A stretch of DNA of 64,000 nt, taken from positions 434,001-498,000 of the forward strand of contig JANJGN010000150.1 of NCBI GenBank assembly GCA_026770705.1, read 5' to 3'. The stretch is from Isurus oxyrinchus. Its lineage: Eukaryota. The notes under the pieces are model-generated. The model had not been told where the DNA came from and ran no database searches. It saw only the letters and a program-made list of their open reading frames with translations. Every line of letters begins with the position of its first letter. The stretch's first letter is position 1. Made by a program: the position numbers and the translations under genes. This document shows positions 8,354 to 45,700 of the stretch, in pieces.

Positions 8354-8393
8354 ATGATCGGGAAATCTTACTTCCTCCTGTCACTTCTCCAAG
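8354..8393 (+). CDS. Gene A signal-peptide exon (MIGKSYFLLSLLQ)
   Basis: ACAATG start, hydrophobic core, phase-1 donor CAAG|GTAATA, acceptor TTCTCTTTCAG ending 8311. Identical peptide at 24975 and 63796. Confidence 0.85.
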
Positions 8394-11300
8394 GTAATAT
8401 CATCGTCAGCTCGGACAGATTTATGGTGAATAGTCTTTGTAAAAGATCATTCTTATTGAGCTTTGATTGGTAACAGATTCAGCAGTGAGCCAGTGTACAA
8501 ACTCACACCAAGTCCCATTGACCCATCACCCCTGTGCTCACTGATATACACTGACTCCCTGTCTGACAGCAGAATTGGAGGAGAGCAGAGATCTCAGAGG
8601 GGTGAAGGGGCTGGATGAGGTTACAGAGGTAGGGACTGGAGAGGGGGTTGGGGGGATTGGGAATTGAGGATGAGAATCTTAAAATGGAGGCACTGCTTGA
8701 CTGGGAGCCTATGTAAGTCAGTGTGGATGGGGGGAAGGGTGGTAAAAGGTTGAGTAGAAAATCAGGGATAAAAACTGGAGGATGAAGTCTCTCCCTATGT
8801 TAGGTGTCTGATAGCAATATCCTAAAATGTGTCTTTTGCTGATTTTATTCAGAATTTCCCATGAAGACAACACAGCAGCTCCTAGAATAGACAGGCTGTT
8901 CAGTGTCACACTTCCTGTCCATTCTCACCTTGCTAGATACTTCAATAAGGGAGCAAGATAACTGAAAGAGAGAAGGAAGGTAAAGCTGTCCGTGTGTAAA
9001 GGTGTCAATATTCAGTTTGTATATTTGTCTTTCTCTCGACACATGCAGAGCTCAGGCGAGAGGCGCTTTGTTAGTGTGTTTCACAGTGTCTGCTGGAGTA
9101 GGGTCAGTGCTGAGCTTGGGGACAAGTCAGTCTACAATGCTGCATCGGAATCAACAATACAACAATATGGGGTTTGGATCAGAAATAATCCCTTAGACAA
9201 TGAGGATCCATAGAGATTCCTTAGACAATGAGGATCCAAAGAGATTCCTGAAACAATGAGGATCCAAAGAGATTCCTCAGACAATGAAGGTCTAAAGTGC
9301 ACCAATCATATTGAACCAGATTAACCAATCAGCTGTGTTGAAGAGCAGACAGGAATGTTAGGCTAATTAGTGATTCATGACGGTGATAATGGGGGGAGTT
9401 CTGACGGCTCCTAATCCATTGTCCTGTCTTGTAAATCAGCACTGAATGGATCTCAGTTGGTGTGTCTTGTAGACACAGTGTTGGGTCACATTTAATCATT
9501 GACATTAAAGTGATAATTAGCGGCTGCATTTGCACTGAACATGAAGCAGTCACCAGGCCGCTTGAAATGAAGAATCCAAATGGTCCAGATGAGCAGAGAG
9601 CAATAGATTATATTTACATAGCGCCTTAACTGTAACAAAAAACAATCCAAGGGGCTACACAGGAGCATTATAATACAAGGCACAGTGACACTGTCTCACT
9701 GGCTTCACTAAACAGGGTCCTGAGGACCATGAGCCAATGTAGAATGAACTTGTCCACTCCTGTGTCCAGGATTCTCTTCCATCCATTGTGAAACCTTGAG
9801 GAGTTCCTTGTGTGTCCTGTATATGGTCCACACTGCAGCCACTGTGCCCCAGTGATGGAGGGGGTGGATATCGAGTCTAGTGGATCTACAAACCTTCCAG
9901 AGTTAAATATTGATATTTCTCTCCCCAGTTGGACTGTCACAAGAGTGGAAAGGTGACAGTCCCCGAGAGGTGACAGCGCAGGAAGGTTCGTGTGTACAGA
10001 TTCCATGTCATTACAGTTACCCATCACATTTGGAAAGCCAACCGCGAGGTGGACTCTGGTTTAATAATGAGGAACAGATTCCCTGGGCTCCCATTGCCTT
10101 TCACTCCAAGGATCACAGTCACGAGTTACCATGGTTCCGCCATCGGACCCGGCTGTCTGGAGACCTGAAAGATGGCGACTGTTCCCTGATTATAAACAAC
10201 ATCAGACGGGAAGATGCAGGAACTTATTATTTCAGAATAGAATTTGACAATGGTCCGAGCCATAACTATTACCCTGTAACCCAGCTTCACGTTTCTGGTA
10301 AGTGCTGTGTTATAATTACTCAACAATTCACATTCAACACTCAATGGGAAATAACACAAACTGTGACGTTTACGTATTAACACAAAACACAGCTTATTAT
10401 AACACACTGTCTGATTCTCAATAACCTGGTGATAGCTTCCAGTTCAGTCCTAAAGCAACCTCTAATACTCACTTTAATATCAATGATGAAAAGCATTAAC
10501 TGTATTATCAGGTTATCCACTCCCATCAATCTCTCCTGTCCTGTTTAAAAGTCTGACTTATCGATAAAAGAAAGATGTGCATTTCTGCAGCGCAATTTAC
10601 CACCTCAGGAGGATCCAAATCCCTTCACAGCCAATGAAATTATTCCTGAATTGTGGTCACAGATGTTAAACACAGCAGGCAGTTTGTGCACAGCAAGATC
10701 CAGCAAACCACAATGTAATAAATCACCCAGATCGCTGAGGAAATGAGAAGCCAGTGAACTCAAACCTCTGGTCTGATGAAGAGTCATACGGACTCGAACG
10801 TTAACCCTGTCTTCCTCTCCACTGATACTGTCAGACCTGCTGAGTCTTTCCAGCAATTTTTGTTTTGGTTTCAGATTTCCAGCATCCACAGTATTCTGCT
10901 TTTAACTCCAATCTCTGGTCTGAGCCTCTTCTCTCATCCAGTGTTCTCAATTCACATGTCTCGGAGTGAACGTGTATTAAGCTGAGAGACAGAAACACTA
11001 CTGCCAAAGAGCAAGAAAATCTTTCCTGATCATTGTAACCTCTCAGTTCTGATATCATCCTTGTAAAAGTGCTTTCTCTTGTGGGACTGTGATTTCTATT
11101 TGAACTGATGCTTCACGTTATATTTCTCTAAAAGGATCCATTCTCTGTCTGTTAGATTTCACAGATAAACCCACAATATTCCCTGCGGAAATTATTGCAG
11201 GAAAGCGTGTGGATGTAAGCTGCACCTTCAACACAACGTGCAATGGAACAGCAGCACCTGTCTTAACCTGGGACACTCCCACTGACGTACCTGGATCAGT

Positions 11301-14300
11301 CTCAAACACTGTAACTCAGCATGGTGTCACTCTGACCTATACTTCTGTTCTGACCCTGATCCCATCACTCAAACACCACGGACACACTTTCAGCTGCAGA
11401 GTGAGATATCCAACTGTTTCATCGGAGCGGACCCTCGTACTAACTGTGCAATGTAAGTACGGACACCTTTTATTCTACATTAGCTAGAACAGTGTAGATA
11501 ATGCACAGCAGGATCCCATAGAAAGGTATTCTGATGAGAATCAGAGAATCTGTTTTTTAGGGAAAATTGTGACCGGAACACAATTAATAACAGTTTCTGA
11601 ACAGTAACACAGCGGCTTTTATTTCCAGCCAAGAGACCGATAGAGCAGAGCAGGAATCGCAATGTACTCACCCCCTGACAGTGCAGCACTCCCTCAGTAC
11701 TGACCCTCTGACAGTGCAGCACTCCCTCAGTACTGACCCTCTGACAGTGCAGCACTCCCTCAGTACTGAACCTCTGACAGTGCAGCACTCACTCAGTACT
11801 GACCCCCTGACAGTGCAGCACTCACTCAGTACTGACCCTCTGACAGTGCAGTACACCCTCAGTACTGACCCTCTGACAGTGCAGCACTCCCTCAGTACTC
11901 ACCCCCTGACAGTGCAGCACTCCCTCAGTACTGACCCTCCGACAGTGCAGCACTCCCTCAGTACTGACCCTCTGACAGTGCAGCACTCCCTCAGTACTGA
12001 CCCTCTGACAGTGCAGCACTCCCTCAGTACTGACCCTCTGACAGTGCAGCACTCACTCAATACTGAACCTCTGACAGTACAGCACTCCCTCAGTACTGAC
12101 CCCCTGACAGTGCAGCACTCCCTCAGTACTGACCCTCTGACAGTGCAGTACTCACTCAATACTGAACCTCTGACAGTGCAGCACTCCCTCAGTACTCACC
12201 CCCTGACAGTGCAGCACTCCCTCAGTACTGACCCTCTGACAGTGCAGCACTCCCTCAGTACTGACCCTCTGACAGTGCAGCACTCCCTCAGTACTGACCC
12301 CCTGACAGTGCAGCACTCCCTCAGTACTGACCCTCTGACAGTGCAGCACTCCCTCAGTACTGACCCTCTGACAGTGCAGCACTCCCTCAGTACTGACCCC
12401 CTGACCGTGCAGCACTCACTCAGTACTGACCTTCTGACTGTACAGCATTCCCTCAGTACTGACCCTCTGACTGTACAGCATTCCCTTAGTACTGACCCTC
12501 CGACAGTGCAGCTCTCCCTCAGTACTGGCCCTCTGACTGTGCAGCACTCCCTCAATACTGACCCTCTGACAGGGCAGCACTCCCTCAGTACTGACCCTTT
12601 GACAGTGCAGCACTCCCTCAGTACTGACCCTCTGACAGTGCAGCACCCCCTCAGTTCTGATCCTCCGACAGTGCAGCACCTCCTCAGTACTGACTCTCCG
12701 ACAGTGCAGCACTCCTTCAGTACTGACCCTCTGACAGTGCAGCACTCCCTTAGTACTGACCCTCCAACAGTGCAGCACTCAATCAGTACAGACCCTGCAA
12801 CAGTGTTGCAATCCCTCAGTACTGACCCCCTGATCGTGCAGCACTCCCTCAGTACTGATCCTCCGACATCGCAGCACTCCCTCAATAATGTCCCTCCAAC
12901 AGTGCAGCACTCCCTCAGTACTGACCCTCCGACAGTGCAGCACTCCTTCAGTACTGACCCTCTGACAGTGCAGCACTCCCTCAGTCCTGTCCCTCTGATA
13001 GTGCAACACTCTCTCAGAACTGACCCGCTGACAGTGCAGCACTCCCTCAGTACTGACCCTCTGACAGTGCAGCACTCCCTCAGTACTGACCCTCTGACAG
13101 TGCAGCACTCTCTCAGTACTGATCCTCCAACAGTTTAGAAATCTCTCTGTACTGATCCTCCATCCGTGCAGCACTCCCACAGTACAGACCCTCCAACAGT
13201 GCAGCACTCCCTCAGTACTGACCCTCTGACAGTGCAGCACTCCCTCAGTACTGACCCTCTGACAGTGCAGCACTCCTTCACTACTGAAGCTCCAACTCTG
13301 CAGCGCTCCCTCAGATCTTACAATCCAACATTGAATACCTCCCTCCCGACTGACCCTCAGATAATGCTGCAGTCCCTTGTTCCAGAGCTTCCAACTGTGC
13401 AACACTCCCTCAGTAATGACCCTTTGACAGTGCTGCTCTCCCTCAGTATTGCCTTTAAACTAAATAGATGGGGAGAGTGTTCTGGAGAGGGTATATGTAG
13501 GCTTACAAAGCAAAAGGATTTGTCAGCATTGCAGGATAGCTGTTTTGGTGATGATACCCAGTGTGTGACAGGTGGGTACACAGTGTCCAAACATTAAAAT
13601 ACATCAGCAAATAGTGTCAGAGGGAGGAAAATGATAAAAAGACAAAATTAATGGCTCTTGACTTAAATGCACATAGTATTTGGAACAACATAAATGAATT
13701 AAAGGCACAAATAGAGGTTAATGGGTTTGATCTTATAGCCATTATGGAGACATGGTTACAAGGAGATCAAAGCTTTGAAATAAATATTCAGGGGTATGTG
13801 ACTTTTCAAAAAGACAGGCAGGAAGGAAAGGTGGTGGGGTAGCTTTGTTAATAGGAGATGGAATAAGTACGAAAGCAAGAAATGATCTTGGATCGGAGGG
13901 TATAGAATCCATATGGCTCGAGGTAATGAATAACAAGTGGAGGAAGGAACTGGTGGGAGTGGTCTATCAACCCCATGACTGTAGCTCGGCTATAGGACAG
14001 AGAATAAATCATGAGATAATGAGGGCATGTAAAAAAGGCAGTACATTAATCTTCATGTAGATTGGGAAAACCCAATTGGCAGAGGTAGCCATGAGCAAGA
14101 ATTCATAGAGTGTATTCAAGACAGTTTCCTGGAATAATATGTCGTGGATCTAACCAGGGATCAGGCTATTTTGGATCTGGTAATGTGTAATGAGGCAGGT
14201 TTCATACATGATCTCAGAATAAATGATCCCCTGGAAAACAGTGACCATAACATGGTAGAATTTAGCATTCCGTTTGAGACTGAGAAACGTGGGTCGGAAA

Positions 14301-17300
14301 CAACTGTGCTGGACTTAAATAAGTGTAATGACAAAGGAATAAGGACAGGGTTGTCTGGAGTGGACTGGGAAAGGGGTTTAGCAGAAAAGATGCTGGATGA
14401 ACAATGGCAGATCTTTAACAAAATAGCTCATGACTCACAACAAAGATATATCCCAGTGAGGAAGAAGGATTGTAGGAAGAGAATAAACCAACCTGGGTTA
14501 CCCAAAGAAGTTAAGGTGTGTGTCAAATTGAAAGAAAAAACATGCAGCACGACAAAGATTAGTGGTAAGCCAGAGGATTGAGAGAGTTTTAAAAACCAAC
14601 AGAAGATGACCAAAAAATAAATAAAGAGGGAGAAAACTAGGTAAACTAGTAATTGATATAAAAAAGGACAGTAAAAGCTTCTTTAAATATATAAAAAGGG
14701 AGAGAGAGACCAAAGTGAACATGGGCCCCTTAGAGAACTAGGCTGGGGAAATAATAATGGGGAACCAGAAAATGACAGAGGAGTTGAATAAATACTTTGC
14801 ATCAGTCTTCACAATAGAACACACTAATATCATTCCAAAAATACTAAATAATCAAGGGGCAAAAGGGGGGTGGGGAGAGGAAATAAATACAATAACTATC
14901 ACTAGAGAATAACGCTAGCGAAACTAATGGGTCTCAAGTCTGATAGGTCTCCTGGACCTGATAGGTTGCATCTTAGGATATTAAAGGAAGTAGATGCAGA
15001 GATAGTGGATGTACTGGTTTTAATCTTCCAAGAATCCTTAGATTCTGGGAAACTCCCAGAGGATTGGAAATCTGCCAAAGTAACACCCATATTCAAAAAG
15101 GGAGGGAGACAACAAACAGGTAACTATAGGCCAGTTAGCTTAACATCTGTCATTGGGAACATGTTAGAGTCCATTATAAAGGATGTAATAGCAGACTATT
15201 TAGAAATGCATAATTTAAACAAACACAGGCTTCATGAAGGGGAAATCATGCATGACAAATTTATTAGAATTCTTTGAGGAGGTAACAAACAGGATAGATA
15301 AAGGGGAACCAGTAGATGTAATATATTTGGATTTCCAAAAGGCATTCAGTAAAGTACCACATATAAGGCTACTTAATAAGATAAGAGCCCATGGTGTTGG
15401 GGGCAGTATATTAGCATGGATAGAGGATCGGCTAACTAATAGAAGTCAGAGAGTTGGGATAAGGGGGGCATTTTCAGGATGACAACCTGTGGATTGCCAC
15501 ACGGATCAGTGCTGGGGCCACAATTATTTACAATATATAATTAATGACTTGGATGAGGGAAATTAATGTACTATCGCCAAGTTTGCGGATGACACAAAAA
15601 TAGATGGGAAGGCAAGCGGTGAGGGTGACACGAAGAGTCTACAGAGAGACATAGACAGGTTCAGTGAGTGGGCATCAACTTGGCAGATGGAATATAATGT
15701 GGGAAAATGTGAGCTGCTGCACTGTGGCAGGATGTATAGAGGAGCTGAATATTATTTCAATGGAGAAAGACATTGGAAAGCTGAAGCATAGAGGAATTTG
15801 GGGGTCATCAGAAAGATAACATACAAGTTCAGCAGTTAATAGGGAAGGCAGGTGGAATGTTGGCCTTTATTTCAAAGGGAATGGAGTATAAAAATAGGGA
15901 AGACTTGCTAAAACTTTACAAGGCACTCGTTAGACCACACCTAGAATACTGTGAGCAGTTTTGGTTCCCTTATCTAAGGAAAGATGTACTGGCATCGGAG
16001 GCAGTCCAGAGAAGGTTCACTAGGTTGATCCCAGTAATGGAGGGATTTTCATATGAGGAGAGGTTGAGTAGGATGGGCCTGTACTCATTGGAGTTTAGGA
16101 GAATGAGAGCTGACCTTATTGAAACATATAAGATTCTTAGGGTGCTTGACAGGGTAGATGCTGAGAGGTTGTTTCCCCTTGTGGGAGAGTCTAGGACCAG
16201 AGGGCATAATCTCAGAGTAAGGGGTCACCCATTTAAGACAGAGATGAGGAGTTTCTTCTCTCAGAGGGTAGTGAATGTGTGGAATTCTATACCGCAGAGA
16301 GCTGCAGAGGCTGGGTCATTAATTATATTCAAGGCTGAGATACACAGTTTTTTGGGGGACAAGTCAGTCTACAATGCTGCATCGGAATCAACAATACAAC
16401 AATATGGGGGTTGGATCAGAAATAATCCCTTAGACAATGAGGATCCAAAAAGATTCCTTAGACAAAGAAGATCCAAAGAGATTCATTAAACAATGAGGAT
16501 CCAGGGATAAATATTGAGATTTCTCTCCCCAGCTGGACTGTCACAAGAGTGGAAAGGTGACACTCCACGAGAGGTGACAGCGCAGGAATCTGTGTACAGA
16601 TTCCATTTCGTTACAGTTATCCAGTAGAGTTGGAAAACAAACCACGAGATGGAATCTGGTGTAATAAAGAAACACACAAATTGGGTTCTCCCATTGCCTT
16701 TCACTCCAAGGATCACAGTCACGAGTTACCACGGTTCCACCATCGGACCCGGCTGTCTGGAGACCTGAAAGATGGCGACTGTTCCCTGATTATAAACAAC
16801 ATCAGACGGGAAGATGCAGGACCTTATTTTTTCAGGATAGAATTTGACGGCAGGAAAAGATACAACTACTATCCTGTAACCCAGCTTCATGTTTCTGGTA
16901 AGTGCTGTGTTATAATTACTCAACAATTCACATTCAACACTCAATGGGAAATAACACAAACTGTGACGTTTACATATTAACACAAAACACAGTTTATTTT
17001 TACACACTGTCTGATTCTCAATAACCTGGTGATTGCTTCCAGTTCAGTCTTAAAGCAACCTCTAATAATCACTTTAATGTCAATGATTAAATGTATTGAC
17101 TGTGTCCATCAATGCTATCAGGCTATCCACTCCCATCAGTCTCTCTAATCCTGTTTAAAAGTCTAACAATTTGACAAAAGAAGGACGTGCATTCCTATAG
17201 CACCTTTCACCACCTCAACAAACTTCAAATCACTTCACAGACAATGAAGAAATTCTTGAAGTATAGTCACTGTCTAACGTGGCAGTGAGTTTGTACACAG

Positions 17301-20243
17301 GAAGCTCCCACAGAGAGCAATGGGATCAGTGACCCAGATCTCTGAGAGAATGATGAGCCAGGGTTCCATGAGCTGTGGACTGCTCCATCACCCACACCCC
17401 AGTGTTGGCAATTCAAGGTTCTGGGAGTGAAAGTGTATTCAGCTCAGTGACACATTCCCCACCAAGTTTGAAAATAGGAAAGTTGCTGCTGATTGTTGTG
17501 ACCTCTCAGTTCCCATCTCATCCTTGGAAACCTGCTTTCAAAATACAAAAGCAAGTCTCGCATTTCCATAGCGCCTTTCACCACCTCAGGACGATCCTAA
17601 ATCGATTCACAGCCAATGAAGTGATTCTTGAAGTACACATTCTCCCCACTCTCTGGGTAAAGAAGTTTCTCCTGAATTCCCCATTGGATTTATTAGTGAG
17701 GATGTTATACTGTCAGCCTCTGGTTTTGTTCATTGTGATGAGTGGAAACACTCTCTCCATGTCTACTCGATCAAAACCTTTCACTACTTCAAAGGTCAAA
17801 TGAGGTCACCCTTCAACCTTCTCTGTTCAAGAGAACAGAGACCCAGCCTGTACATCCTCTCCTGATAGGTAAAGCCTCACATTGCGGAGATCATCCTTGT
17901 GAAGCTTTTTACCACCCTCTCCAGTGTCTCTATATCCTTTTCCAAATGCTGAGTCTGTTCTCCCCGAGCTGTGAGCTGTTCCTCCACCCTCACCCAGTCT
18001 GGTCAAATCAAGGGTCACTGAGTGAGAGTGTATTAATCTGAGTGACAGAGATTCAACAAGTGTAAAAATAGACAATTCTAAAATGATCGTTGTAACCTCT
18101 CAGTTCTGATATCATCCTTGTAAAAGTGCTTTCTCTTGTGGGACTGTGATTTCTATTTGAACTGATGCTTCACGTTATATTTCTCTAAAAGGATCCATTC
18201 TCTGTCTGTTAGATTTCACTGATAAACCCACGATATTCCCTGCTGAAATTATTGCAGGAAAGCGTGTGGATGTAAGCTGCACCTTCAACACAACGTGCAA
18301 TGGAACAGCAGCACCTGTCCTAACCTGGGACACTCCCACTGACGTACCTGGATCAGTCTCAAACACTGTAACTCAGCATGGTGTCACTCTGACCTATACT
18401 TCTGTTCTGACCCTGATCCCATCACTCAAACACCACGGACACACTCTCAACTGCAGAGTGAGATATCCATCTGTTTCATCGGAGCAGACCCTCGTACTAA
18501 CTGTGCAAGGTAATTACATACACCTTTCATTCTACATCAGCACTCCCTCAGCGCTGACCCTCTGACAGTGCAGCCCGTTCTCAGTGTCCACATTCTCAGA
18601 CCTCTCAAAGTGCTTCACAGTCGATAGCAATTAACTGATCTTTAATTGATTATTGCTGAATGAAGGGACAAGCTGTCTAAACTTTACAGCTCGCACACAT
18701 TATTTTCCATGGCAACTCTCCTCCAATCAGAGATCACTTGCCACCCAATCAGCACTCTCTTCCCTTTAAATATAAATTGTTGTTCATTTTCTGTGGTAAA
18801 CCTGCGATCTGTCTTGTTGAGTCCTGCGCTGACATCTCAATGTCCCAATGAACAGAACAAGTTCCAACAATGAGCTGTGGTTGGTGATTCCTCATGTTAC
18901 ATCCATGGACACTGGAGACTATCAGTGTGTGGCAGAGAATGAACATGGAGCAGTGGAGGGGTTCATAACCATCACTGTGGAACGTGAGTTACACAGACTT
19001 CAACATCTCTCTTAGATTCAAACACTACACAAACACACATAAATATACAGACCTAAATAGACAGCTGCAGACACACAATCCCACATCTATGAGCACACAC
19101 AAAGACACACTCACAAACAAATACACTATCACATACTGCCCTGTGGGTTTCCTGACCTCCTTCAGTGTTGCACCGGAGAGTTGACCTGGATTCTGGGATT
19201 TGTGTTCCCTTTCATATTAATGGAAGAATATGGAAATTTCAAAGTCTACTACAGACACTCAGATGCACAGAGATACTCACAGATACTCTCTGCCTCTCCA
19301 ACTCTCTATCCTCCTTTAAGAAGCTTCCTGAAACCTAACCCTTTGACCAGTCACCTGTCCCAACTCGTCCTTATGTGATTTTGTGTGAAATTTTGTTTGA
19401 GTATCTGAGAGTAAGTGAGAGGTGGAGAGGTTTAGGAAGGGAATTCCTGTTGGTGAAAAGCTTACATCAAGTTCTCAGCTTTCCAGTGCACATATTTCAC
19501 ATGATGTCCAATGTCCATGTTCATAATGGGGATTGCCTATGTAAACGTTATGCTGTAGTTACACTCTCCCACCAGTGGTGGCACGGTTGCACTTAACCCT
19601 TGCATCTCCCAGCTTTTCAAGCAATTTCACTTCCTAATTCGCTACTACTCACCTCAACCACTCCCAGTGGGAGCGAGTTCCACATTCTCCCCTCTCTCTG
19701 GGTAAAGATTGGAACTGTTTATTAAGCGGGGGGTGTAAGTCCGTGGGGGAGTCCATCTCGATCCTGCCCGAATCACACACGCGTCCGAGATGGATTTCCA
19801 CCCTGCACTAAACGTTTCCAGAATTTTCTACAGCACAATCCTGTACACAGTGATGGAGAGAAACATTGGACAGGGAGTCCAACAGCACAATGATCCATTC
19901 TCACCAATGTTCCACGCTAACGGGAAAGTTCCGATTGTCCACTCTTCGAGTGTTTACAATGAAAACATTCATTCCACATTGAATCCCAGTGGATGAGTCA
20001 ATATTACAGCAAATGTTGCAGTGATATGAAGCTTGATTGTTCAGCCAGAGTGAGAGATTGAAAGCGGAGAGTCAGTGATGATTTCTTTCTGTGTGTTCTC
20101 TAGACAGTGGAGGAGAGATTCTGCACGTGATCCTGATCCTGGGAATACGAGCTGTGATATTCCTTGTGGCTGTGGTTATCACTATCACTGGAGTCTGTGT
20201 CTGGGAGAGACAAACAGTGAAAGGAAGTCGACAGACTGTTTGA
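8354..20243 (+). CDS. Gene A: putative activating Siglec-like receptor; join(8354..8393,9929..10297,11156..11452,18213..18509,20104..20243), 380 aa
   Basis: All exons have AG/GT ends with phase-1 junctions, and the joined frame is open when the frameshifted V and half-Ig exons are skipped. Siglec V-set and C2 motifs are present, with Arg in the TM and no cytoplasmic Tyr. Confidence 0.72.
9929..10297 (+). CDS. Gene A Siglec V-set exon V1 (essential Arg present)
   Basis: AQEGSCVQIPC...W...GDCSLIINNIRREDAGTYYFRIE, matching the Siglec B-E strand disulfide pattern and F-strand Arg. CCCCAG acceptor, G|GTAAGT donor, 369 nt open. Confidence 0.93.
10770..10905 (+). mobile_element. Short Penelope-derived terminal fragment with a degenerate hammerhead-like motif
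   Basis: CTGATGA-A-GAGTC-ATACG-GACTC-GAACG, followed by a tail similar to 39000-39115 and to the minus strand of 41190-41260. Confidence 0.65.
11156..11452 (+). CDS. Gene A C2-set exon (CD33-type second domain)
   Basis: FTDKPTIFPAEIIAGKRVDVSCTFNTTCNGTAAPVLTW...SVLTLIPSLKHHGHTFSCRV. The extra BC-loop Cys is typical of Siglec domain 2. 297 nt, AG/GT. Confidence 0.92.
11665..13450. repeat. 33-bp satellite array, intronic
   Basis: Same unit; homogeneous at the 5' end, degenerating toward the 3' end. Confidence 0.95.
13452..16352 (+). mobile_element. CR1-clade LINE, near-complete disrupted ORF2 (AP endonuclease + reverse transcriptase)
   Basis: LNAHSI...DLIAIMETWL (APE), SPGPD, NYRPVSLTS, SCMTNLLEFFE, VIYLDFQKAF, FADDTK, LYKALVRPHLEYC; multiple stops and frameshifts. 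Confidence 0.93.
16533..16897 (+). pseudogene. Frameshifted V-set exon V2
   Basis: 4-nt deletion (GAAGGTTCGTGTG to GAATCTGTG) gives TAG at 16625-16627. The B-strand Cys codon is changed TGT to TTT. Splice sites are intact and FFRIE is retained in the shifted frame. Confidence 0.88.
17640..17945 (-). mobile_element. CR1-like LINE 3' fragment
   Basis: Resembles the 3' end of the other CR1 copies in the window, in reverse orientation. Confidence 0.6.
18213..18509 (+). CDS. Gene A second C2-set exon (duplicate of 11156-11452)
   Basis: 297 nt open, AG acceptor, CAAG|GTAATT donor; nearly the same peptide. Confidence 0.85.
18831..18983 (+). pseudogene. 3' half of an Ig exon (HLNVPMNRTSSNNELWLVIPHVTSMDTGDYQCVAENEHG...)
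   Basis: Near-identical to the 3' half of exons 39400-39681 and 40585-40866. The donor C|GTGAGT is retained; the 5' half and acceptor are replaced by unrelated sequence. Confidence 0.85.
20104..20243 (+). CDS. Gene A TM/tail exon with intramembrane Arg (SGGEILHVILILGIRAVIFLVAVVITITGVCVWERQTVKGSRQTV*)
   Basis: Polypyrimidine acceptor TTTCTTTCTGTGTGTTCTCTAG, phase 1; hydrophobic segment with CGA (Arg) at 20148-20150; TGA at 20241-20243. Not in the ORF track because it lacks a start codon. Confidence 0.85.
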
Positions 20244-20369
20244 AGCTTTGTACAGCAACAATCTGGTCAGTCAGTGCGGACAAATAACGTGTGATGTTGG
20301 GTTAAGTTGTAATGAAACTGGTCAGTGTCCTGGTTAGAATCACCTTCGTATCAGAGAGGTATTCCAGCA

Positions 20370-20940
20370 CAGTAGGAGCCCATTCAGCCCATTGAGTCCA
20401 TGCTGCCTCTCTGTAGAGCAATCCACTCAGTCCCATTTCCCCCGCTCTATCCCCGTATCCCTGTGAGTTTATTTCCCCTCATGTGTCCATCCAATTTCCT
20501 TTTGAAATCGTTCATCGTCTCCACTTCCACCATCCTCGTAGGCAGCGAGTTCCAGCTCATTACCACTCGCTGTGTAAAAAAGTTCCTTCTCACATCACCC
20601 CCTGTCCAAATCCTTCAATCTGTGTCCCCCAGTCCTTGTACCATCAGCTAATGGCAACAGCATCTCTTTGTCTGCCTTATCTAAACCCATCATCATCTTG
20701 TACACCTCGATCAGATCCCCCCTCAATCTCCTTTGCTCCAAGGAGAACAACCCCAGCTTCTCCAACCCAACCTTGTAGCTAAAATCCCTCATCCCTGGAC
20801 CCATTCTGCTCAATCTCCTCCCCACCCTCTCAAGGACCCTCACTTCCTTCCCAAAGTGAGGAGACCAGAACTGGACACAATACTCTAGTTGTGACCTAAC
20901 CAGAGCTTTATAAATGTTCAGCATAACCTCCCTGTGTTTT
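20370..20940 (-). mobile_element. CR1-like LINE 3' fragment
   Basis: ORF 20595-20924: KALVRSQLEYCVQFWSPH...LGLFSLEQRRLRGDLIEVYK. Confidence 0.88.
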
Positions 20941-21679
20941 TACTCAATCCCTCGATTTATGAAAAGCTTATTCTTTCCATCAGCACAAACAGCAATTTCC
21001 AAGCGGACTCCCATCAGCAGACAGAGTGCAATGAAACATCGGCATGCCTGCTTCTTAATGTACGGAGAGAAACCTGCAACGAGAGATTCTCCTTCTTCTC
21101 CTCAGCAAGCTGAAACTTTTCCTTATACCTGGTGCTCCCCAGTCCTGCTGTGTGGACACATCATAACCACGGCATTATCTGGCTGTGTGCAGCCAACATG
21201 GTCGAATAGGAATGAACGGAAATGTGACGTTGCTAAACTCTGTTCTCTGATTGGAATGTGCTTTCTGAATGCTGCACCTTTTTCATGCTGCGATAGATTG
21301 TAAGAAGCATTTGGGTTATGAATAAAATTACATTGATTAACACAAGTGATTAAAATGCTCAGCCTGTTCTGTAGATATTTATAGATTAAAATTCTTATTT
21401 TGAAGCCAAATTTTTGGCTCAAAGACATTACTTCATGTTGTCACATTTGTTCTATCATACGAATTCCTGTGCCCAGCTTTATAATAGAAATTTCCCATGT
21501 AAACATGTCACATTGTAGTTTCACACTCCTGCCAGTGGTGGTGCCATTCCAAAGCTGTCTTGCTGCACCGAACAGTGGGAAATATTCTCGACGTGTACAT
21601 GATGTTGTTGTTACACGGACATCAGGCGGAACCTTGGGCAGTGCCTAGAATGCACTTAGAACAGTGCAGACCACGCTCA

Positions 21680-24160
21680 GAACTGACAGTGCAGCGTTTC
21701 CTCAGTGCTGACCCTCCGTCAGTGCAGCGCTCCCTCATTACTGTCCCTCTGACAGTGCTGCACTACCTCATTATTGACCCTTTTCAAGTGCAGCACCCCG
21801 TCAGCACTGACCTTCTGACAGTGCAGCACTCCCTCATGGATGACAATCTGACAGTGCAGCACTCCCTCAGTACTCACTCACCCACAGTGCAGCATTACCT
21901 CAGTACTGATCCTCTGATACTGTATCCCTCCCTCACTACTGACCTTCCGACAGTTCGGCACTCCCTCGGTACACACCTTCTGACTGTGCAGCACTCCCAC
22001 AGTGCTGACAAACTGACAGTGCAGCATTCCCTCAGTACTGACCCTCTGACACTGTATCCCTCCCTCACTACTGACCTTCCGACAGTTCAGCACTCCCTCA
22101 GTACTGACGCTCCCACAGTGCAGTACTCCCTCAATTCTCACCCTCCCACAGTGCAGCACTCCCTCAGTACTCACCCTCCCACTGTGCTGTGCGAGTTGTT
22201 TCAATCAAGACTGATGCCCAAAGAGGGAGGTTTCATTGCTAAATCATTGAAATCGTGAAAATTATTTTTAGGCTTACGGGAACAAAACTTAGTTCCTCAA
22301 ATCCTTTCTTTTGCAATAACACACAGTACAAGAATTGTGTTTAAATAAATTCCAGTTAAACTTTGCCATGAAAGGATATCTCTCCGCTCTACCTCAGTAC
22401 TAACCCTCCCACAGTCCGGCACCCCCTCAATACTGACCCTCCAACTGTGCGGAACTCACTCAGTACAGACCCTCCGACAGTGCAGCACTCCCACATTACT
22501 GACCCTCTGACAGTGCAGCCCTCCCACATTACTGACCCTCTGACAGTGCAGCAATCCCTCATTACTGACCATCTGACAGTGCAGCCCTCCCACATTACTG
22601 ACCCTCTGATAGTGCAGCACTCCCTCATTACTGACCAACTGACAGTGCAGACCTCCCACATTACTGACCCTCTGACAGTGCAGCCCTCCCACATTACTGA
22701 CCCTCTGACAGTGCAGCCCTCCCACATTACTGACCCTCTGATAGTGCAGCACTCCCTCATTACTGACCACGTGACAGTGCAGACCTCCCACATTACTGAC
22801 CCTCTGACAGTGCAGCCCTCCCACATTACTGACCCTCTGACAGTGCAGCACTCCCTCATTACTGATCCTCTGACAGTGCAGCACTCCCTCAGTACTCACT
22901 CTCCCACAGTGCAGCACTCCCTCAGTACTCACTCTCCCGAAGTGCAGCCCTCCCTCAGTACTCACCCTCCCACAGTGCTGTGTGAGTTGTTTCAATCAAG
23001 ACTGGTGCACAAAGAGGGAGGTTTCAATGCTAAATCATTGAATCGGTGAAAATTATTTTTAGGCTGAGGGGAACAAGACTTAGTTCCTCAAATCCTTTCT
23101 TTTGCAATAACACACAGTACAAGAATTCTGTTTAAATAAATTCCAGTTAAACTATGCCATGAAAGGATATCTCCTCACGCTCCGCTCTACCTCAGTACTA
23201 ACCCTCCCACAGTCCGGCACCCCCTCAATACTGACCCTCCAACTGTGCGGAACTCACTCAGTACTGACCCTCCGACAGTGCAACACTCCCACATTACTGA
23301 CCCTCTGACAGTGCAGCCTTCCCACATTACTGACCCTCTGACAGTGCAGCACTCCCTCATTACTGACCATCTGACAGTGCAGACCTCCCACATTACTGAC
23401 CCTCTGACAGTGCAGCCCTCCCACATTACTGACCCTCTGACAGTGCAGCCCTCCCACATTACTGACCCTCTGACAGTGCAGCACTCCCTCATTACTGAAC
23501 CTCTGACAGTGCAGCACTCCCTCAGTACTCACTCTCCCACAGTGCAGCACTCCCTCAGTACTCATACTCCCACAGTGCAGCACTCCCTCAGTACTCACCC
23601 TCCCACAGTGCAGCACTCCCTCAGTACTCACCCTCCCACTGTGCTGAGCGAGTTGTTTCAATCAAGACTGGTGCACAAAGAGGGAGGTTTCATTGCTAAA
23701 TCATTGAAATCCGTGAAAATTATTTTTAGGCTTACGGGAACAAGACTTAGTTCCTCAAATCCTTTCTTTTGCAATAACACACAGTACAAGAATTGTGTTT
23801 AAATAAATTCCAGTTAAACTTTGCCATGAAAGGATATCTCCTCACACTCCACTCTACCTCAGTACTAACCCTCCCACAGTCCGGCACCCCCTCAATACTG
23901 ACCCTCCAACTGTGCGGAACTCACTCAGTTCAGACCCACCGACAGTTCAGCACTCCCTTATTACTTACCCTCTGATAGTGCAGCACTCACTCATTACTGA
24001 CGCTCTGATGTTGCAGCACTCCCACATTACTGACTCTCTGACAGTGCAGCCCTCCCACATTACTGACTCTCTGACAGTGCAGCCCTCCCACATTACTGAC
24101 CCTCTGATAGTGCAGCACTCCCACAGTAAACTCCCGCTGACAGTGCAGCACTCCCTCCGT
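21680..24160. repeat. 33-bp satellite variants interleaved with a triplicated ~195-bp spacer
   Basis: Spacer GAGTTGTTTCAATCAAGACTG...GCCATGAAAGGATATCTC at ~22192, ~22983 and ~23650. A local unit variant contains CCCACATTACTG. Confidence 0.9.
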
Positions 24161-24379
24161 AATGATAACAGGGATCGTTGAAATGTATCATAAGGCCAGA
24201 GACCTGTATTGGGAACTCTTATCGCCTGAGTTTCAGCCTCCGAGGTGAGGGGCAGGAGTCTAATCCCACAGAGCCAATGGAGAAGCTTCATGACTACAGC
24301 TGCCCAAATATGAGCTGACAGATCATCACATGGTAAGCGTTTTGCTGAGAGCACAAAACATCCTCGATCTTCTCACTGG

Positions 24380-28000: not shown

Positions 28001-31000
28001 TGTGTCTTCAAAGGTTTCCTGAGCAGTCAGTACACTGCGATTTCAACCCTCTCTGATGCTGTGTCTCTGTTGTGGTCTGACCAAAGCGTCGAGGGTCGTC
28101 TCATGCCATGTAGTTCGATCTAAGGCTGTTCACCATGTCATACCTGTACTGAATCTTGCTGCCAGAATGTTTGGCCACCGCTGATCACCATGTTGTGTTT
28201 TTCTAATGATATAAAGGCACCAGCCACTGATACGGAATTGGGTAAATACATTGTGGGTTCAGTTATTTAGAACAGGGACATGAGAACAGATATACAAGGA
28301 TAGAAAGCTGGGAGACACCTGCGGCCAAACTGTGTGAGCTGTGTTCTGCTCACAGGCCAAAGTGAAACTTGGACTGGATGGTGTTATCATCCCAGCTGAT
28401 GTTACTGCTGGGCAAGTCAGATCCCAGGGTGGAACTCAGCTTGATAGGTCCTAACTTTTATTTTTTATTTAGGAATGTGGAGTGCGGCTACTGAACAGAG
28501 TCACAGGAGTCATCTGTTGATCTTCTAACAAAAGAATAAAACATTTATTAAACTAGGAAAGACAAACTATATTACATTACACCTTCACCCAGATCTATAC
28601 CTTTGCAGATTCATAAGTAGAACACAAGTTACAATAACTATCTTATATTCTCATGTTCACCCTAAGTGCACTTTCGATATAAACCAATAGACGACCTGTG
28701 GTCAGGGACACCACATTCTGAAAGCAAGTGGCAGAGCCCACTTGAAACAATATCTATGTCTCATCTGTCCCCAGACGCTTGTTACACTGTGAGCCAACCA
28801 GTCTCACTGAAAAGCTTCTTTCATATGAGAGTTTCCAATCTCCACTCTCCAAGAACTCACTTTGGAATCTTCTCCAACATGACACTTTCACTCAGACACC
28901 TTCCACAAGGGTCCACTTTCACTATTTCAAACTCTCCTTCCCATGTTCCTGCCCCCTGGATCGCCACGTGCATTCAGCCTTCCTTCCACGCCCTGTCTCT
29001 CCAATGCTCAGCCGTGTCAATGGAACACCATGGCTTCACATGGCCGTAGTAATGAGTCACCAACCTGTGGTGTCTCCTAGGATCTTCTGGCTTCTCGCAA
29101 GCCTATTTTGCTTTAGGCAAAACAAAATCAGCAAGTTAACCCAATGTCCCGGACAGTGGAATTCCAAATGCATTGTCCCAACTTCAGTTCTGTTGGATAG
29201 CAGGCTTCTGTACAAACAGGGTCCTGAGGACCATGAACCAATGTAGAATGAACTTTTCCACTTTTGTGTCCAGGATTCTCTTCCATCTGGTGTGATACCT
29301 TGTGGAGTTCATTGTGTGTCCTGTAGATGGTCCACACTGCAGCCACTGTGCCCGAGTGATGGAGGGGGTGGATATCGAGTCTAGTGGATCAACAAAACAT
29401 CCAGAGTTAAATATTGATATTTCTCTCCCCAGTTGGATTGTCACAAGAGTGGAAAGGTGACACTCCACGAGAGGTGACAGCGCAGGAAGGTTCGTGTGTA
29501 CAGATTCCATGTCATTACAGTTATCCATCAGATTTGGTAAAGAAACCACATGTCGGAATCTGGAAAATGAGAAGCTACATACGGAACAAATGGTCTAAAT
29601 GGTCTACAGCCTTTCACTCCAAGGGTCACAGTCACGAGTTACCACGGTTCCGCCATCGGACCCGGCTGTCTGGAGACCTGAAAGATGGCGACTGTTCCCT
29701 GATTATAAACAACATCAGACGGGAAGATGCAGGACCTTATTTTTTCACGATAAAATTTGGCAATCGTCCGAGCCATAACTATTACCCTGTAACCCAGCTT
29801 CAGGTTTCTGGTAAGTGCTGTGTTATAATTACTCAACAATTCACATCCAACACTCAATGGGAAATAATAGTGTTTGATTTGCTTGTTTTTTGGCCGTGTT
29901 AACCTGCGTCACTATTTTTAATGATTTGTCTATTTCTGCTCCCAGATCCATGAGCTTATTGTGTGTGATTGAATCCACATCATAGCTGTAATGTAAACCG
30001 AGCTGAGGGGTGATGACACCTCCCCCCTGAGTGAAGTATCTCCTCCCCACTACACCTTCCACCCCTCACACTGTCCGTGTAAACCCCCGTCCCATCTCCA
30101 GCCTCTCTTTCCCCTCCAAAGTCCTTGAACGTGTTTCCATCTCCCGAATCCGTTCCCATCTTTCCCGGATCTCCATGTTTGAATCCCTCCAATCAGGTTC
30201 CCACCCCAGCCACTGTGCTGAAACAGCTCCTATCAAGGTCAGAAATGGCATCCTGTGTGACTGTGACAAAGGTCAACTTTCCCTCCTCGTCCTTCTCGAT
30301 CTGTCTGCAGCCTTTGACACGCTCGACCACACCATCCTCCTCAAACACCTGTCCACTGTCGTCCAGCTGGGTGGGACTGCTCTCCCCTGGCTCCATTCTT
30401 ATCCATCTCATCGTAGCCAGAGAATCACTTGCAATGGCTTTGCAGCATCATCTGAACAGTGTTAGTTTTCACCTGTCCACTGAGGATCCCCAGCTCTACC
30501 TCACCACCACCTCTCTCGACTCCGCCACTGCTGCTAAATTATCAGGCTGCTTATCCGACATCCAGTACTGGATGGGCAGAAATTCCCTCCAATTAAATAT
30601 TGGAAAGACTGAAGCCATTGTCTTCATTCCCTGCTCCAAACTCTGTTCCCTCGCTACCAACTCCATTCCTCTCCCTGGCAGCTCTCTGAGATTGAAGCCA
30701 ATCTGTTCACAGCTTTGTTGTCCCATTTGATCCTGAGATGAGCTTCCGGCCTCATATCTGCGCCCTCACTAACACCGTCTATTTCCACCTCCGTAACATT
30801 GTACGACGTCACCCTGTCTCAGCTCATCTGCTGCTGAAACCCTCATCCACGCCTTCATTACCTCCAGACTCGACTGTTCCAACACACGCTCTACACTCCA
30901 TAAACTTGAGGCCATCCAAAACTGCTGACCACATCCTTACTCACACCAAGTCCCGAGACTGGTTCCTGGTCAAGCAAAGTCTCAATGTCCAAATTTTTGA

Positions 31001-42700: not shown

Positions 42701-45700
42701 GATTACCTGCTGATTGTTCTCTGTCTTTGTTCCAGATCCCCCACAGGAGACGATGGTGTCCATCAGCAGATCCTCAGGTGGGATAAGAGAGGGAAGCAAT
42801 ATCACATTAACCTGCTCCAGTGAAAGTGTCCCACCGATATCTCATTACACCTGGTTCAGGATCGAGGGGAACACCAGCACCCAGTTAAATACAAGTAGCC
42901 GCACTCTCTCCTTCACTCCTGTAACACGGGAGAATGATGCAGGTTTCTACTGCACAGCGAGGAACCCAATGGGTAACAGCATCTCCAACATCACCCACCT
43001 GAACGTACAATGTAAGCATTTTACTCCCCCTGTCTCTGCTTAAAACTCAAACACTTTCTGTCTGAGGGCAGCTTCCTTGCTGTGGTTTAGCATAACTAGC
43101 ATCACCTCCCTGCTTTTTTCACCCTGCGCCTCTCCGAGATACATAAGGAGATATCAGAACAGGGACTGAAAGTTCAGAGAAAGAGGCCAGATTTTAAGGA
43201 GTGTCTGAAATGAGGAGAGAGATAGACATGGAGAGGTTTACGGTGGGAATTCTAGAGCTCGGGGCCCAGGCAGCTGAAGGCACGGCCGCCAATGGTGGAG
43301 CGATAGGAATCGGGGGATGGTCAAGAGGCCGGAATTGGAGGAACACAGAGATCTCGGAGGGTTGTAGAGGCTGGAGGAGGTTACAGAGATAGGGAGGGTT
43401 GTGATGGCTGGAGGAGGTTACAGAGATAGGGAGGGTTGTAGGGGCTGGAGGAGGTAACAGAGATAGGGAGGGTTGTAGATGCTGGAGGAGGTAACAGAGA
43501 TAGGGAGGTGTGTAGGGGCTGGAGGAGGTTACAGAGATAGGGAGGGTTGTGGGGTCTGGAGGAGGTTACAGAGATAGGGAGGGTTGAAGGGGCTGGAGGA
43601 GGTTACAGAGATAGGGAGGGTTGTAGATGCTGGAGGAGGTAACAGAGATAGGGAGGGAGTAAGGAGGAATTTGAAACGATGTAAATTTTAAAATTGTGGC
43701 ATTGTCGGACCGGGAGCCAGTGTAGCTCAGTGACCAACAGGGAGTGATGTGTGAACGGGACTCGGTGTGAGTTAGGACATGGGGACAGCAGAGTTTGGGA
43801 TGAGCTGATGTTTCCGGAGAGTGGAAGATGGGAGGTCGGGCAGGAGAGTGTTGGGATAGTCGAGTGCGGAGGTAACAAAGGCGGGAATGAGTGTTTCAGT
43901 GTTAAGATTCTATCTTACGCTCTAACTTTGCTATGAAGTTGTCTCATTGTTGTCCTTCCCTCCTCAGATAAGCCGGAGATTTCCCAGCAGTCGGAGTGCA
44001 CTCGGAGGTCAGAGGGGGTCACCTGCGTCTGTGTGGCCAACTCCAACCCACCCGGAGACCTCACCTGGCACCTGCCCAGTGCCAAAATCAGTGGTAACCA
44101 AACACACGGAGGTTTTGTGTCGTGGCAGGTCAGAGATGGGCATCTGGTGACTGGTTCCCTCACCCTGATGAGACCCCAGGATGAGGGGGGAGTGATGGCA
44201 TCCTGCTCGGTTCAAAACCCACACGGGGAAGCCATGTTCAAGATGTATCTGTGGGTCAAAGGTGAGAGACTCGCTCAGGATCGATCTCCACTCAGCTGGA
44301 TTGATCCCTAAACTCGAGAATTCCCTCCCTCAACCTCTCCACCTCTCTCTCTACCTCCTCTAAGATGCTCTTTACAATTGACCCCTTTGACCAAGCTTTG
44401 AATCGCCTGACCTCATGTGACAATGGCAACTCTTGGTCAAATTGGAGCCAGGCCGTTCAGTGGGTGATGTCAGGAAGCACTTCTTCACACAAAGGGGAGT
44501 GGAAATCTGGAACCCTCTCCCCCAGATAAGCTGCTTCATTGGGTGCAAGACAGAAAGCTTTGACAAAATGTCCTTTCTCAGCAATACTCAGGTTCTCCTC
44601 CCAAACGATAAAATATTTTATATAAACATTTCATAGATTACATTGATAAATATTATATATAAATGTTACATAGATTACATTGATAAATATTATATATAAA
44701 TGTTACATAGATTACATTGATAAATATTATATATAAATGTTACATAGATTACGTTGAGAAACGCAACAGCTGATTTGTGCAGAGCAAGATCCCACAAACA
44801 ACAGTGTGAAGATGAGGTGATAAATGATTATTTTAGTCATGTTAGTTGATACATATATATAGAAATTAAAGATATAATTACACATTTAGTGAGGGAAACC
44901 TGTCCATTTTAACAGGTCTGGGTGTATATGTGACTCCAGTCTCAAACACCAACATGGTTAACTCTTACCTGCCCTCTGAACTGGTCTCCCAGTTTGGGAC
45001 AAACCAGTGGTTCAGGAGGAAGACCCCCCACCACCTTCTCAAGGGAAACTAGGGATGGACAATAAATGTCAGCATTGCCCGAGAATGAGTATTTAAACAC
45101 TGAGTGAGTGTATCGCTTCTCGAGATACATCGGAGCATCATTGTAAACCTGTAGTGCAGTAATTAATGGCTGTTTTTACAGGTAGAGACTCCAGTAAATG
45201 GACAGTAGGATTGTTCACGGCTGGGATCATGTTGAGTGTTTTCCTGGCTGGAATCTTCATCTTCATCTGTGTGAGAAAGTAAGTCTGAAGATTTAACTTG
45301 ATTTTAATATAAACATTTGTTTAGGATTAATTGGACAGTTTTTACAAAGGGCCAGCACAGGCACGATGGGCTGAGTGGCTTCCTCCTGAGCTGTGAGATT
45401 TTAAATTCTTTCATCGAATGTGACTGTCACTGGCGTGGCCAATACTAATTGCCCATTCCCTAATTGCCCCTTGAGAATGAGGTAGTGAGATGCCTTCTTG
45501 ACCCGCTGCAGTCCATGTGGTGTAGGTACACCCACAGTGCTGTTAGAGAGGGAGTTCCAGGAGTTTGACCCAGCGACAGTGAAGGAACGGTGATATATTT
45601 CCAAGTCAGGATGGTGAGTGACTTGGAGGGGAACTTCCAGGTGGTGGTGTTCCCATGTGTCTGCTGCCCTTGTCCTTCTAGATGGTAGAGGTCGTGGGTT

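What the first reader, a model, noticed from the sequence alone, without database searches (positions are those of the whole stretch)
20104..20243. Hidden TM exon with an intramembrane arginine and no signalling tail
Absent from the ORF track. From a strong acceptor in phase 1 it reads SGGEILHVILILGI-R-AVIFLVAVVITITGVCVW-ERQTVKGSRQTV*. A basic residue inside the TM is the established docking feature for ITAM adaptors (Arg in Siglec-14 with DAP12; Arg in LILRA, GPVI and FcalphaRI with FcRgamma). It shows no visible similarity to gene B's TM exon, so it appears to have been recruited separately.
Basis: partly seen in the sequence, partly recalled or inferred. Interest (0 to 1): 0.85.

Follow-up and report, generated by a model that had tools for sequence, protein, structure and literature searches.

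The report
Shark Siglec-like receptor arginine membrane exon
This short exon is a real last exon of a shark Siglec-like immune receptor family: it encodes a membrane anchor with a conserved buried arginine and almost no tail, the usual build of an "activating" receptor, but public annotation already shows the family and this copy sits behind a broken exon.

Summary
After a strong acceptor, 20104-20243 reads in phase 1 as (D)SGGEILHVILILGIRAVIFLVAVVITITGVCVWERQTVKGSRQTV*.

- **Not a chance ORF.** A search of 1.84 billion proteins puts this peptide at the C-terminus of annotated immune receptors from seven shark species in three orders (best E 3e-13). The motif ILGIRA is invariant in 17 distinct versions.
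- **Arginine is buried.** It lies 7-11 residues into the hydrophobic stretch. The tail has no tyrosine.
- **Acceptor is used.** RNA-like contigs from three studies join the C2 exon (ends 18509) to 20104 with GT..AG ends.
- **Separate origin.** The exon is unrelated to gene B's uncharged TM exon. The same cassette ends Siglec-like, CD22-like and SLAM-like receptors.

- No adaptor was tested.
- The contigs cannot be assigned to this copy. Every contig that spans the defect in the neighbouring V exon (16533-16897: 4-bp loss, early stop, Cys to Phe) carries the intact form.
- Great white shark RefSeq models already hold near-identical exons.
- This scan had already followed the same exon up on other DNA of this genome (s1-868598, s1-300793).

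It is a new member of a known kind, of moderate interest.

The parts
20104..20243 (+). Terminal coding exon: short stalk, TM helix with conserved ILGIRA arginine, 12-residue tail and TGA stop. The 3' UTR continues downstream; paralogue contigs run on to at least 20514-20571.
   Evidence: (joints into 20104)
18213..18509 (+). C2-set Ig exon C2(2), intact, phase 1 to phase 1. Its donor G|GTAATT is joined to 20104 in contigs.
   Evidence: (PF08205)
16533..16897 (+). V-set exon V2, broken as assembled: 4 bp missing near 16588 gives a stop 12 codons later, and the B-strand Cys is replaced by Phe (IPFRYSYP). The F-strand FFRIEF is kept.
   Evidence: Every contig spanning the site carries the 4 letters (table 4).
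18831..18983 (+). 5'-truncated remnant of an Ig3-type exon. It is 98% identical over 159 nt to gene B's exon at 40714-40872, is closed upstream by a stop, and has an intact donor C|GTGAGT. A paralogue-like contig joins this donor to 20104.
   Evidence: (X8 record 26)
8354..8393 (+). Leader exon MIGKSYFLLSLLQ plus G (phase 1), the only leader upstream of this TM exon. Its twin lies at about 24975 before gene B.
9929..10297 (+). V-set exon V1, intact and Siglec-type: GTYYFRIEF aligns with the essential Arg motif of Siglec-5 and Siglec-7.
11156..11452 (+). C2-set exon C2(1), intact, with a consensus donor T|GTAAGT. No TM exon lies between it and 20104.
11646..13454 (.). 33-bp satellite array lying in the gap between C2(1) and V2.
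14144..16489 (+). LINE-type reverse-transcriptase remnant that ends about 40 bp before the V2 acceptor.
45182..45279 (+). Gene B's TM exon (RDSSKWTVGLFTAGIMLSVFLAGIFIFICVRK), uncharged. Listed for comparison only.

Best explanation
The stretch 20104-20243 is a copy of the conserved last coding exon of an activating-type branch of shark Siglec-like receptors. Shown: it encodes a short stalk, a single TM helix whose motif ILGIRA places an arginine 7-11 residues into the bilayer on the outer side, and an 8-12-residue tail without tyrosines. In the family it is spliced in phase 1 behind a C2-set or Ig3-type exon. The same cassette closes several different shark Ig-receptor architectures. Inferred: like Arg/Lys-TM receptors of mammals and teleosts, the arginine pairs with the TM aspartates of a disulfide-linked ITAM adaptor dimer. 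That pairing would be needed both for surface expression and for signalling, which would make this the activating counterpart of the neighbouring inhibitory-type gene B, whose V4 exon is 88.5% identical in DNA to V1. The depth of the Arg favours an FcR-gamma/CD3-zeta-type partner over DAP12, but the sequence cannot settle this. Whether this copy still makes protein is open. Leader-V1-C2(1) is intact, but the V2 exon between them and the TM exon is frameshifted, so a product requires V2 to be skipped.
For: The sequence and frame are as described. There are eight homologues at E 3e-13 to 4e-5, all C-terminal, among 1.84e9 proteins. They are named RefSeq or GenBank shark proteins. ILGIRA is invariant in 17 distinct cassettes. 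The Arg lies inside the best hydrophobic windows. GT..AG joints 16897->18213, 18509->20104 and 18983->20104 occur in contigs of four runs from four studies. V1 is a Siglec-type V-set domain with the essential Arg aligned to Siglec-5 and Siglec-7. Gene B's TM exon is uncharged and unrelated. The cassette occurs on Siglec V-C2, V-V-Ig3-Ig3, Ig_2/Ig_3 array, single-V and SLAM-like ectodomains. Macaque activating KIR acquired an Arg-TM by recombination and use FcR-gamma, a published precedent (PMC8102735, abstract).
Against: No adaptor binding was tested, and no adaptor sequence was available to me. Akula et al. 2014 (PMC4016189) found no FcR-gamma chain in the shark data of that time; an untested note of this scan (s1-863553) says the gene is present in this genome. 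The joint contigs have only 21-30 letters on the upstream side and differ from the window by about 4 letters in about 150 nt of the TM exon, so they probably derive from paralogues. Expression of this copy is therefore not shown. V2 is frameshifted and has lost its canonical Cys. A LINE remnant and a truncated Ig3 remnant lie in the same gene body. The run type 'RNA' is the tool's guess, and X1 also holds intronic contigs.
Confidence: 0.72

Rival explanations
1. This copy is the still-intact end of a decaying gene. The locus is a patchwork (V1-C2, satellite, LINE, broken V2, C2, truncated Ig3 remnant, TM), and the TM exon is preserved only by youth or by gene conversion from working paralogues. 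It makes no receptor here.
For: V2 has a 4-bp loss, an early stop and Cys to Phe. The LINE remnant abuts the V2 acceptor. The truncated Ig3 remnant has a live donor. All contigs that span the V2 defect carry the intact form. No RefSeq model is identical to this copy.
Against: The leader, V1, C2(1), C2(2) and the TM exon are all open with good splice sites and the same phase, so skipping V2 gives an in-frame receptor. The TM exon has no defect, and its three differences from great white shark paralogues (Leu, Thr, Arg) match residues seen in other sharks. The 4-bp loss could be an allele or an assembly error.
Confidence: 0.4
2. The conserved arginine serves something other than ITAM-adaptor docking. 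Examples are pairing with a YxxM (DAP10-type) or unknown partner, ER retention or quality control, or helix-helix contact within receptor dimers, with output through the PDZ-like C-terminus -QTV.
For: No adaptor is identified. The tail ends in -TV or -SV in lamniform and catshark versions. A 2014 survey failed to find FcR-gamma in sharks.
Against: The build of basic TM residue, tyrosine-free short tail and inhibitory neighbour with a similar V domain is the established signature of adaptor-coupled paired receptors. The -TV end is not kept in orectolobiform versions, which end -KGS or -KGN.
Confidence: 0.15
3. It is a chance open frame behind a chance AG and not an exon.
For: It is short and has no ATG.
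Against: E 3e-13 to annotated C-termini, an invariant motif and spliced contigs.
Confidence: 0.01

Closest known systems
RefSeq models of great white shark (Carcharodon carcharias) Siglec-like two-Ig receptors, e.g. XP_041037236.1, XP_041037232.1, XP_041037190.1 (P0017, P0018, P0014)
   Same: They share the leader-V-C2-TM build. The TM exon is 89-93% identical, including DSGGEILHVI.ILGIRAVIFLVAVVITI.GVCVWE and the end KGSRQTV. The C2 exon is 88-92% identical.
   Different: None is identical to this copy, which has Leu10, Thr28 and Arg35 instead of Gln, Ala and Gly. This locus carries an extra V-C2 pair with a broken V2. The names given by the pipeline (Siglec-7, -12, -13, CD33-like) are best-hit labels and do not indicate orthology.
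Mammalian activating Siglecs (Siglec-14, -15, -16, mouse Siglec-H) that couple to DAP12
   Same: They have a Siglec V-set head with the essential Arg, a basic residue in the TM, a short tail, and an inhibitory neighbour with a very similar head (the Siglec-5/14 and Siglec-11/16 pattern).
   Different: No similarity of the TM exon to them was tested, and no solved chain resembles it. The shark cassette is shared with non-Siglec receptors, which points to an independent origin. The adaptor is unknown.
Arg-TM receptors that use FcR-gamma: Fc-alpha-RI, GPVI, LILRA, OSCAR, KIR2DL4 and macaque KIR3DS
   Same: The arginine sits in the outer third of the TM and the tail is short. Macaque KIR3DS gained this TM by recombination of a TM/tail module onto another ectodomain (PMC8102735), the same modular logic as here.
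   Different: The ectodomain family differs and no sequence relation is shown. Whether sharks use FcR-gamma is unsettled (PMC4016189 against scan note s1-863553).
Teleost LITR, NITR and similar paired receptor families
   Same: They are multigene clusters with inhibitory (ITIM) and activating (charged TM) members that pair with FcR-gamma-, CD3-zeta-like or DAP12 adaptors (PMC4810170, listed; general knowledge).
   Different: The Ig families differ and there is no lectin-type V domain. I found no hit to the cassette outside galeomorph sharks.

Membership tests
Siglec (I-type lectin) family | N-terminal V-set domain of the Siglec/CD22 type | tested here: met
   V1 (9929-10297): Pfam V-set 2.1e-12 and Ig_CD22 1.4e-09. 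The best solved relatives are Siglec-5, -7 and -8, MAG, Siglec-10, CD33 and sialoadhesin, at E 1.5e-15 to 7e-13.
Siglec (I-type lectin) family | Essential sialic-acid-binding arginine on strand F (F-R-x-E) | tested here: met
   GTYYFRIEF aligns with GSYFFRVER of Siglec-5 and GRYFFRMEK of Siglec-7. V2 keeps FFRIEF.
Siglec (I-type lectin) family | V-set domain followed by C2-set domain(s) | tested here: met
   The C2-set_2 exons at 11156-11452 and 18213-18509 score 5e-08. V->C2 joints are seen in contigs.
Siglec (I-type lectin) family | Binding of sialylated glycans | not testable with these tools
   This needs a glycan array or binding assay.
Adaptor-coupled activating immunoreceptors (paired-receptor type) | Basic residue inside the TM helix, conserved among relatives | tested here: met
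   The Arg is at position 7-11 of the best hydrophobic windows. It is invariant in 17 distinct cassettes from seven species.
Adaptor-coupled activating immunoreceptors (paired-receptor type) | Short cytoplasmic tail without ITIM, ITSM or ITAM | tested here: met
   The tail is ERQTVKGSRQTV, 12 residues with no Tyr. Homologues have tails of 5-13 residues with no Tyr.
Adaptor-coupled activating immunoreceptors (paired-receptor type) | Neighbouring inhibitory-type gene with a closely similar ligand-binding domain | tested here: inconclusive
   V1 is 88.5% identical in DNA to gene B's V4, and gene B's TM is uncharged. I did not verify gene B's ITIM/ITSM tail; that is a first-reader note only (s1-864029).
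Adaptor-coupled activating immunoreceptors (paired-receptor type) | Physical association with an Asp-bearing ITAM adaptor dimer, dependent on the basic residue | not testable with these tools
   No shark adaptor sequence was available by reference. Complex prediction takes only session sequences or microbial Swiss-Prot references.
Orthologue of mammalian Siglec-14/-15/-16 | Shared ancestry of the TM/tail exon and orthologous position | not tested
   No mammalian sequence was compared. The sharing of the cassette with CD22-like and SLAM-like shark receptors argues for an independent origin within sharks.

The most novel reading that the evidence does not exclude
A single Arg-TM 'activating cassette' (ILGIRA) has been moved by exon shuffling or gene conversion onto at least three or four unrelated Ig-receptor families in galeomorph sharks, so that one adaptor serves them all. 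At this locus it would still yield an activating partner (leader-V1-C2-TM, with V2 skipped) for inhibitory gene B. If the adaptor is a shark FcR-gamma/CD3-zeta-type chain, this would put adaptor-coupled paired lectin receptors at the base of jawed vertebrates, against the published view that the FcR-gamma module began in bony fish.
Probability: 0.3. Interest if true: 0.55.

Novelty: new member of a known kind. Interest (0 to 1): 0.35.

Why it matters
Paired activating and inhibitory receptors are central to innate immune control in mammals. How old the adaptor-coupled design is, and how activating partners arise, remain open questions. Here a lectin-type (Siglec-like) receptor cluster of a shark shows the full design. 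One conserved arginine-bearing membrane exon is reused on several receptor families across three shark orders. That gives a concrete, testable module for asking which adaptor cartilaginous fish use. The weight of this particular finding is limited. The exon family is already in public automatic annotation, the scan has already reported it at other loci, and this copy may belong to a damaged gene.

Tried and rejected
- **Paralogue of the exon inside the window.** There is none. blastn and tblastn found only low-complexity or satellite noise.
- **Similarity to gene B's TM exon.** There is none.
- **Similarity of the cassette to any solved chain.** There is none even at E up to 10.
- **Literature on shark activating Siglecs or on DAP12/FcR-gamma in sharks.** Six full-text searches found nothing specific. 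The exception is Akula et al. 2014, who report no FcR-gamma in the shark data of that time.
- **P0026 as a guide to gene B's cytoplasmic exons.** Its tail matched only repeat-derived sequence, and I dropped it.
- **P0008 from the protein search.** It is a repetitive false positive with 10 short stretches and no ILGIR.
- **Copy-specific expression.** The single read-laying run, at 92% likeness, cannot separate this copy from paralogues. Table 3 was truncated and shows no rows for the exon itself.
- **Joined (spliced) protein model.** Exons were searched one at a time by reference.
- **Complex prediction.** I did not attempt it, because no adaptor sequence was available by reference.
Full report
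**1. What is there**

A long pyrimidine tract ends in AG at 20102-20103. The exon starts at 20104. From 20106 it reads SGGEILHVILILGIRAVIFLVAVVITITGVCVWERQTVKGSRQTV, followed by TGA at 20241-20243. The two letters AC at 20104-20105 complete a phase-1 codon.

All the Ig exons upstream are phase 1 as well:
- leader, 8354-8393
- V1, 9929-10297
- C2(1), 11156-11452
- V2, 16533-16897
- C2(2), 18213-18509

The exon is unique in the window. It is not TE-derived; repeat sequence only begins about 100 nt after the stop.

**2. Is it more than chance?**

Yes. I ran phmmer with the 45 residues against 1.84 billion representative proteins. It gave nine hits at E up to 0.001.

Eight of them align the whole query to the extreme C-terminus of a protein (E 3e-13 to 4e-5, 68-82% identity). 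The ninth, P0008, is a repetitive false positive.

The eight are NCBI models from Scyliorhinus torazame, Chiloscyllium punctatum, Hemiscyllium ocellatum, Rhincodon typus and Mustelus asterias. A word-indexed search restricted to the cassette added Carcharodon carcharias and Scyliorhinus canicula.

In total there are 24 proteins with 16 distinct cassettes, plus the window's own, making 17. In all of them ILGIRA, the following IF and a G.CV near the inner end are invariant. Every true hit of the unbiased search carried ILGIR, so the invariance does not come from how I cut the sequences.

**3. Where is the arginine?**

Two scales were used: Kyte-Doolittle, and the Hessa biological scale with values recalled from the literature. 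On both, the best 19-25-residue windows all contain the Arg, at position 7-11.

The stretch from the Arg to Trp33 has only 18 residues, and Glu-Arg follows it. Seven to ten conserved hydrophobic residues (vilILGI) precede the Arg. The Arg is therefore buried in the outer part of the bilayer.

The tail (ERQTVKGSRQTV) has no tyrosine, so it carries no ITIM, ITSM or ITAM.

**4. Is the acceptor used?**

I laid the contigs of four runs on 16400-21000 at 92% likeness. The runs come from four studies and two coded organisms, and their RNA status is the tool's guess.

| Joint (all GT..AG) | Exons joined | Runs |
|---|---|---|
| 16897>18213 | V to C2 | X1, X5, X6 |
| 18509>20104 | C2 to this exon | X1, X5, X6 |
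| 18983>20104 | Ig3-type exon to this exon | X8, one 674-nt contig |

Joints that skip 1.1-1.6 kb exactly at GT..AG are themselves the sign of spliced RNA.

The limits are real:
- The upstream side of the C2>TM joints is only 21-30 letters.
- The X5 and X6 contigs differ from the window by about 4 letters in about 150 nt. That matches the three amino-acid differences from the common great white shark paralogue type.
- The X8 contig is 93-95% alike.
- At the V2 defect, every contig that spans the site carries the four letters the window lacks. The others stop at the site (table 4).

So the contigs show that the family uses this acceptor. They do not show that this copy is expressed.

**5. The local gene**

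V1 is a good Siglec-type V domain. Its GTYYFRIEF aligns with the essential-arginine motif of Siglec-5 and Siglec-7. C2(1) and C2(2) are intact.

V2 is broken as assembled:
- Four letters are missing after ...GCGCAGGAA.
- The phase-correct frame reads GLSQEWKGDTPREVTAQE-SVYRFHFVTVIQ-stop.
- The rest of the exon reads in another frame, with the B-strand Cys replaced by Phe.

A LINE-type remnant (14144-16489) ends about 40 bp before the V2 acceptor. A satellite array (11646-13454) lies behind C2(1).

Between C2(2) and the TM exon lies a 5'-truncated remnant of an Ig3-type exon (18831-18983). It is 98% identical over 159 nt to gene B's exon at 40714-40872. It is closed upstream by a stop but keeps its donor.

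No other TM exon lies between the leader at 8354 and 20104. Three outcomes are therefore possible:
- V2 is skipped, giving V1-C2(1)-(C2(2))-TM, which is in frame.
- The transcript is terminated within V2.
- V1-C2(1) ends by read-through (TVQ-CKYGHLLFYIS-stop), as in RefSeq model P0025.

I put the odds that this copy is functional at roughly even.

**6. Relation to gene B and origin**

Gene B's TM exon (45182-45279, RDSSKWTVGLFTAGIMLSVFLAGIFIFICVRK) is uncharged and shows no alignment to this exon.

The cassette is found on several ectodomain types:
- Siglec V-C2 receptors
- V-V-Ig3-Ig3 Siglec-like receptors (P0002, P0003)
- arrays of Ig_2/Ig_3 domains without a lectin head (P0004, P0005, named CD22-like)
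- a single Ig_CD22-type V domain (P0006)
- SLAM-family-like receptors (P0007, P0009)

So it is a mobile module rather than a diverged copy of the neighbour's anchor. The Ig3 remnant in front of it here, and the Ig3>TM joint in X8 and in P0002, suggest that the two-Ig genes derive from a longer Ig3-containing form.

**7. How it most likely works**

Shown: a conserved buried Arg, a tyrosine-free tail, family-level splicing, a Siglec-type head, and an inhibitory-type neighbour with an 88.5% identical V exon.

Inferred from established receptor biology (Siglec-14/DAP12; Fc-alpha-RI, GPVI, LILRA and KIR2DL4/FcR-gamma): the Arg pairs with TM aspartates of an ITAM adaptor dimer, which permits surface expression and signalling through Syk-type kinases.

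The outer-leaflet depth fits the FcR-gamma/CD3-zeta type better than the mid-membrane Lys of DAP12 partners, but this is weak evidence.

A 2014 survey found no FcR-gamma in sharks (PMC4016189). A follow-up note of this scan (s1-863553, not tested by me) reports an FcR-gamma gene in this very genome. The macaque KIR case (PMC8102735) is a published precedent for gaining an Arg-TM module by recombination.

**8. Novelty and verdict**

The closest relatives are great white shark RefSeq models (89-93% over the exon, none identical). The genome is therefore probably a lamniform shark or a close relative, though I did not establish this.

Public automatic annotation already holds the exon family. This scan had already followed it up elsewhere in the genome, with the same conclusions (s1-868598, s1-300793), which I reproduced independently here. 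I found no paper describing these receptors.

The finding is real and its reading sound. It is a new member of a known kind, and this copy may be damaged.

**9. Steps not done**

- I tested no adaptor.
- I filled in or looked up no N stretch.

Noticed in passing
window 16533-16897: V-set exon V2 is frameshifted (4 bp missing near 16588, stop 12 codons later) and has Phe in place of the canonical B-strand Cys. All RNA-like contigs that span the site carry the four missing letters.
   Followed up: yes
window 18831-18983 vs 40714-40872: This is a 5'-truncated remnant of an Ig3-type exon, 98% identical over 159 nt to gene B's exon. That is far closer than the 84-91% between the other duplicated exons, which suggests recent conversion or transfer. 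Its donor is spliced to the TM exon in a paralogue-like contig of run X8.
   Followed up: partly
window 18540-18575, and arrays at 1490-6135, 11646-13454, 21683-24165, 49611-50004, 62823-63185: A 33-bp satellite flanks many Ig exons of the cluster. In the RNA-like runs the bins covering its short copy just after the C2(2) donor reach summed depths of 38,000-91,000, so the satellite is either abundantly transcribed or very abundant in those libraries.
   Followed up: no
window 14144-16489: A LINE-type reverse-transcriptase remnant ends about 40 bp before the V2 acceptor. It marks the 5' edge of the V2-C2(2) duplication unit.
   Followed up: partly
window 20205-20243: The tail holds a short internal repeat (RQTV-KGS-RQTV) and ends in -QTV, which fits a class I PDZ-binding end. 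Catshark versions stop at ERRTV or end -QSV, while carpet-shark versions end -KGS. The CGA (Arg) codon after KGS is one C-to-T change from a stop.
   Followed up: partly
window 11452-11487: The C2(1) donor is a perfect T|GTAAGT. Read-through gives CKYGHLLFYIS-stop, like the C-terminus of RefSeq model XP_041037187.1 (P0025), so a secreted V-C2 form is possible.
   Followed up: no
window 29414-29902: Gene B's outer V exon reads YFFTIKF where the others read YFFRIEF, so it lacks the essential arginine, as another first-reader note (s1-864041) says.
   Followed up: no
literature vs this genome: Akula et al. 2014 (PMC4016189) state that the FcR-gamma chain is absent from cartilaginous fish. Scan note s1-863553 reports an FcR-gamma gene in this genome with a 99% identical great white shark protein in public annotation. 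If that holds, the published statement is outdated.
   Followed up: no
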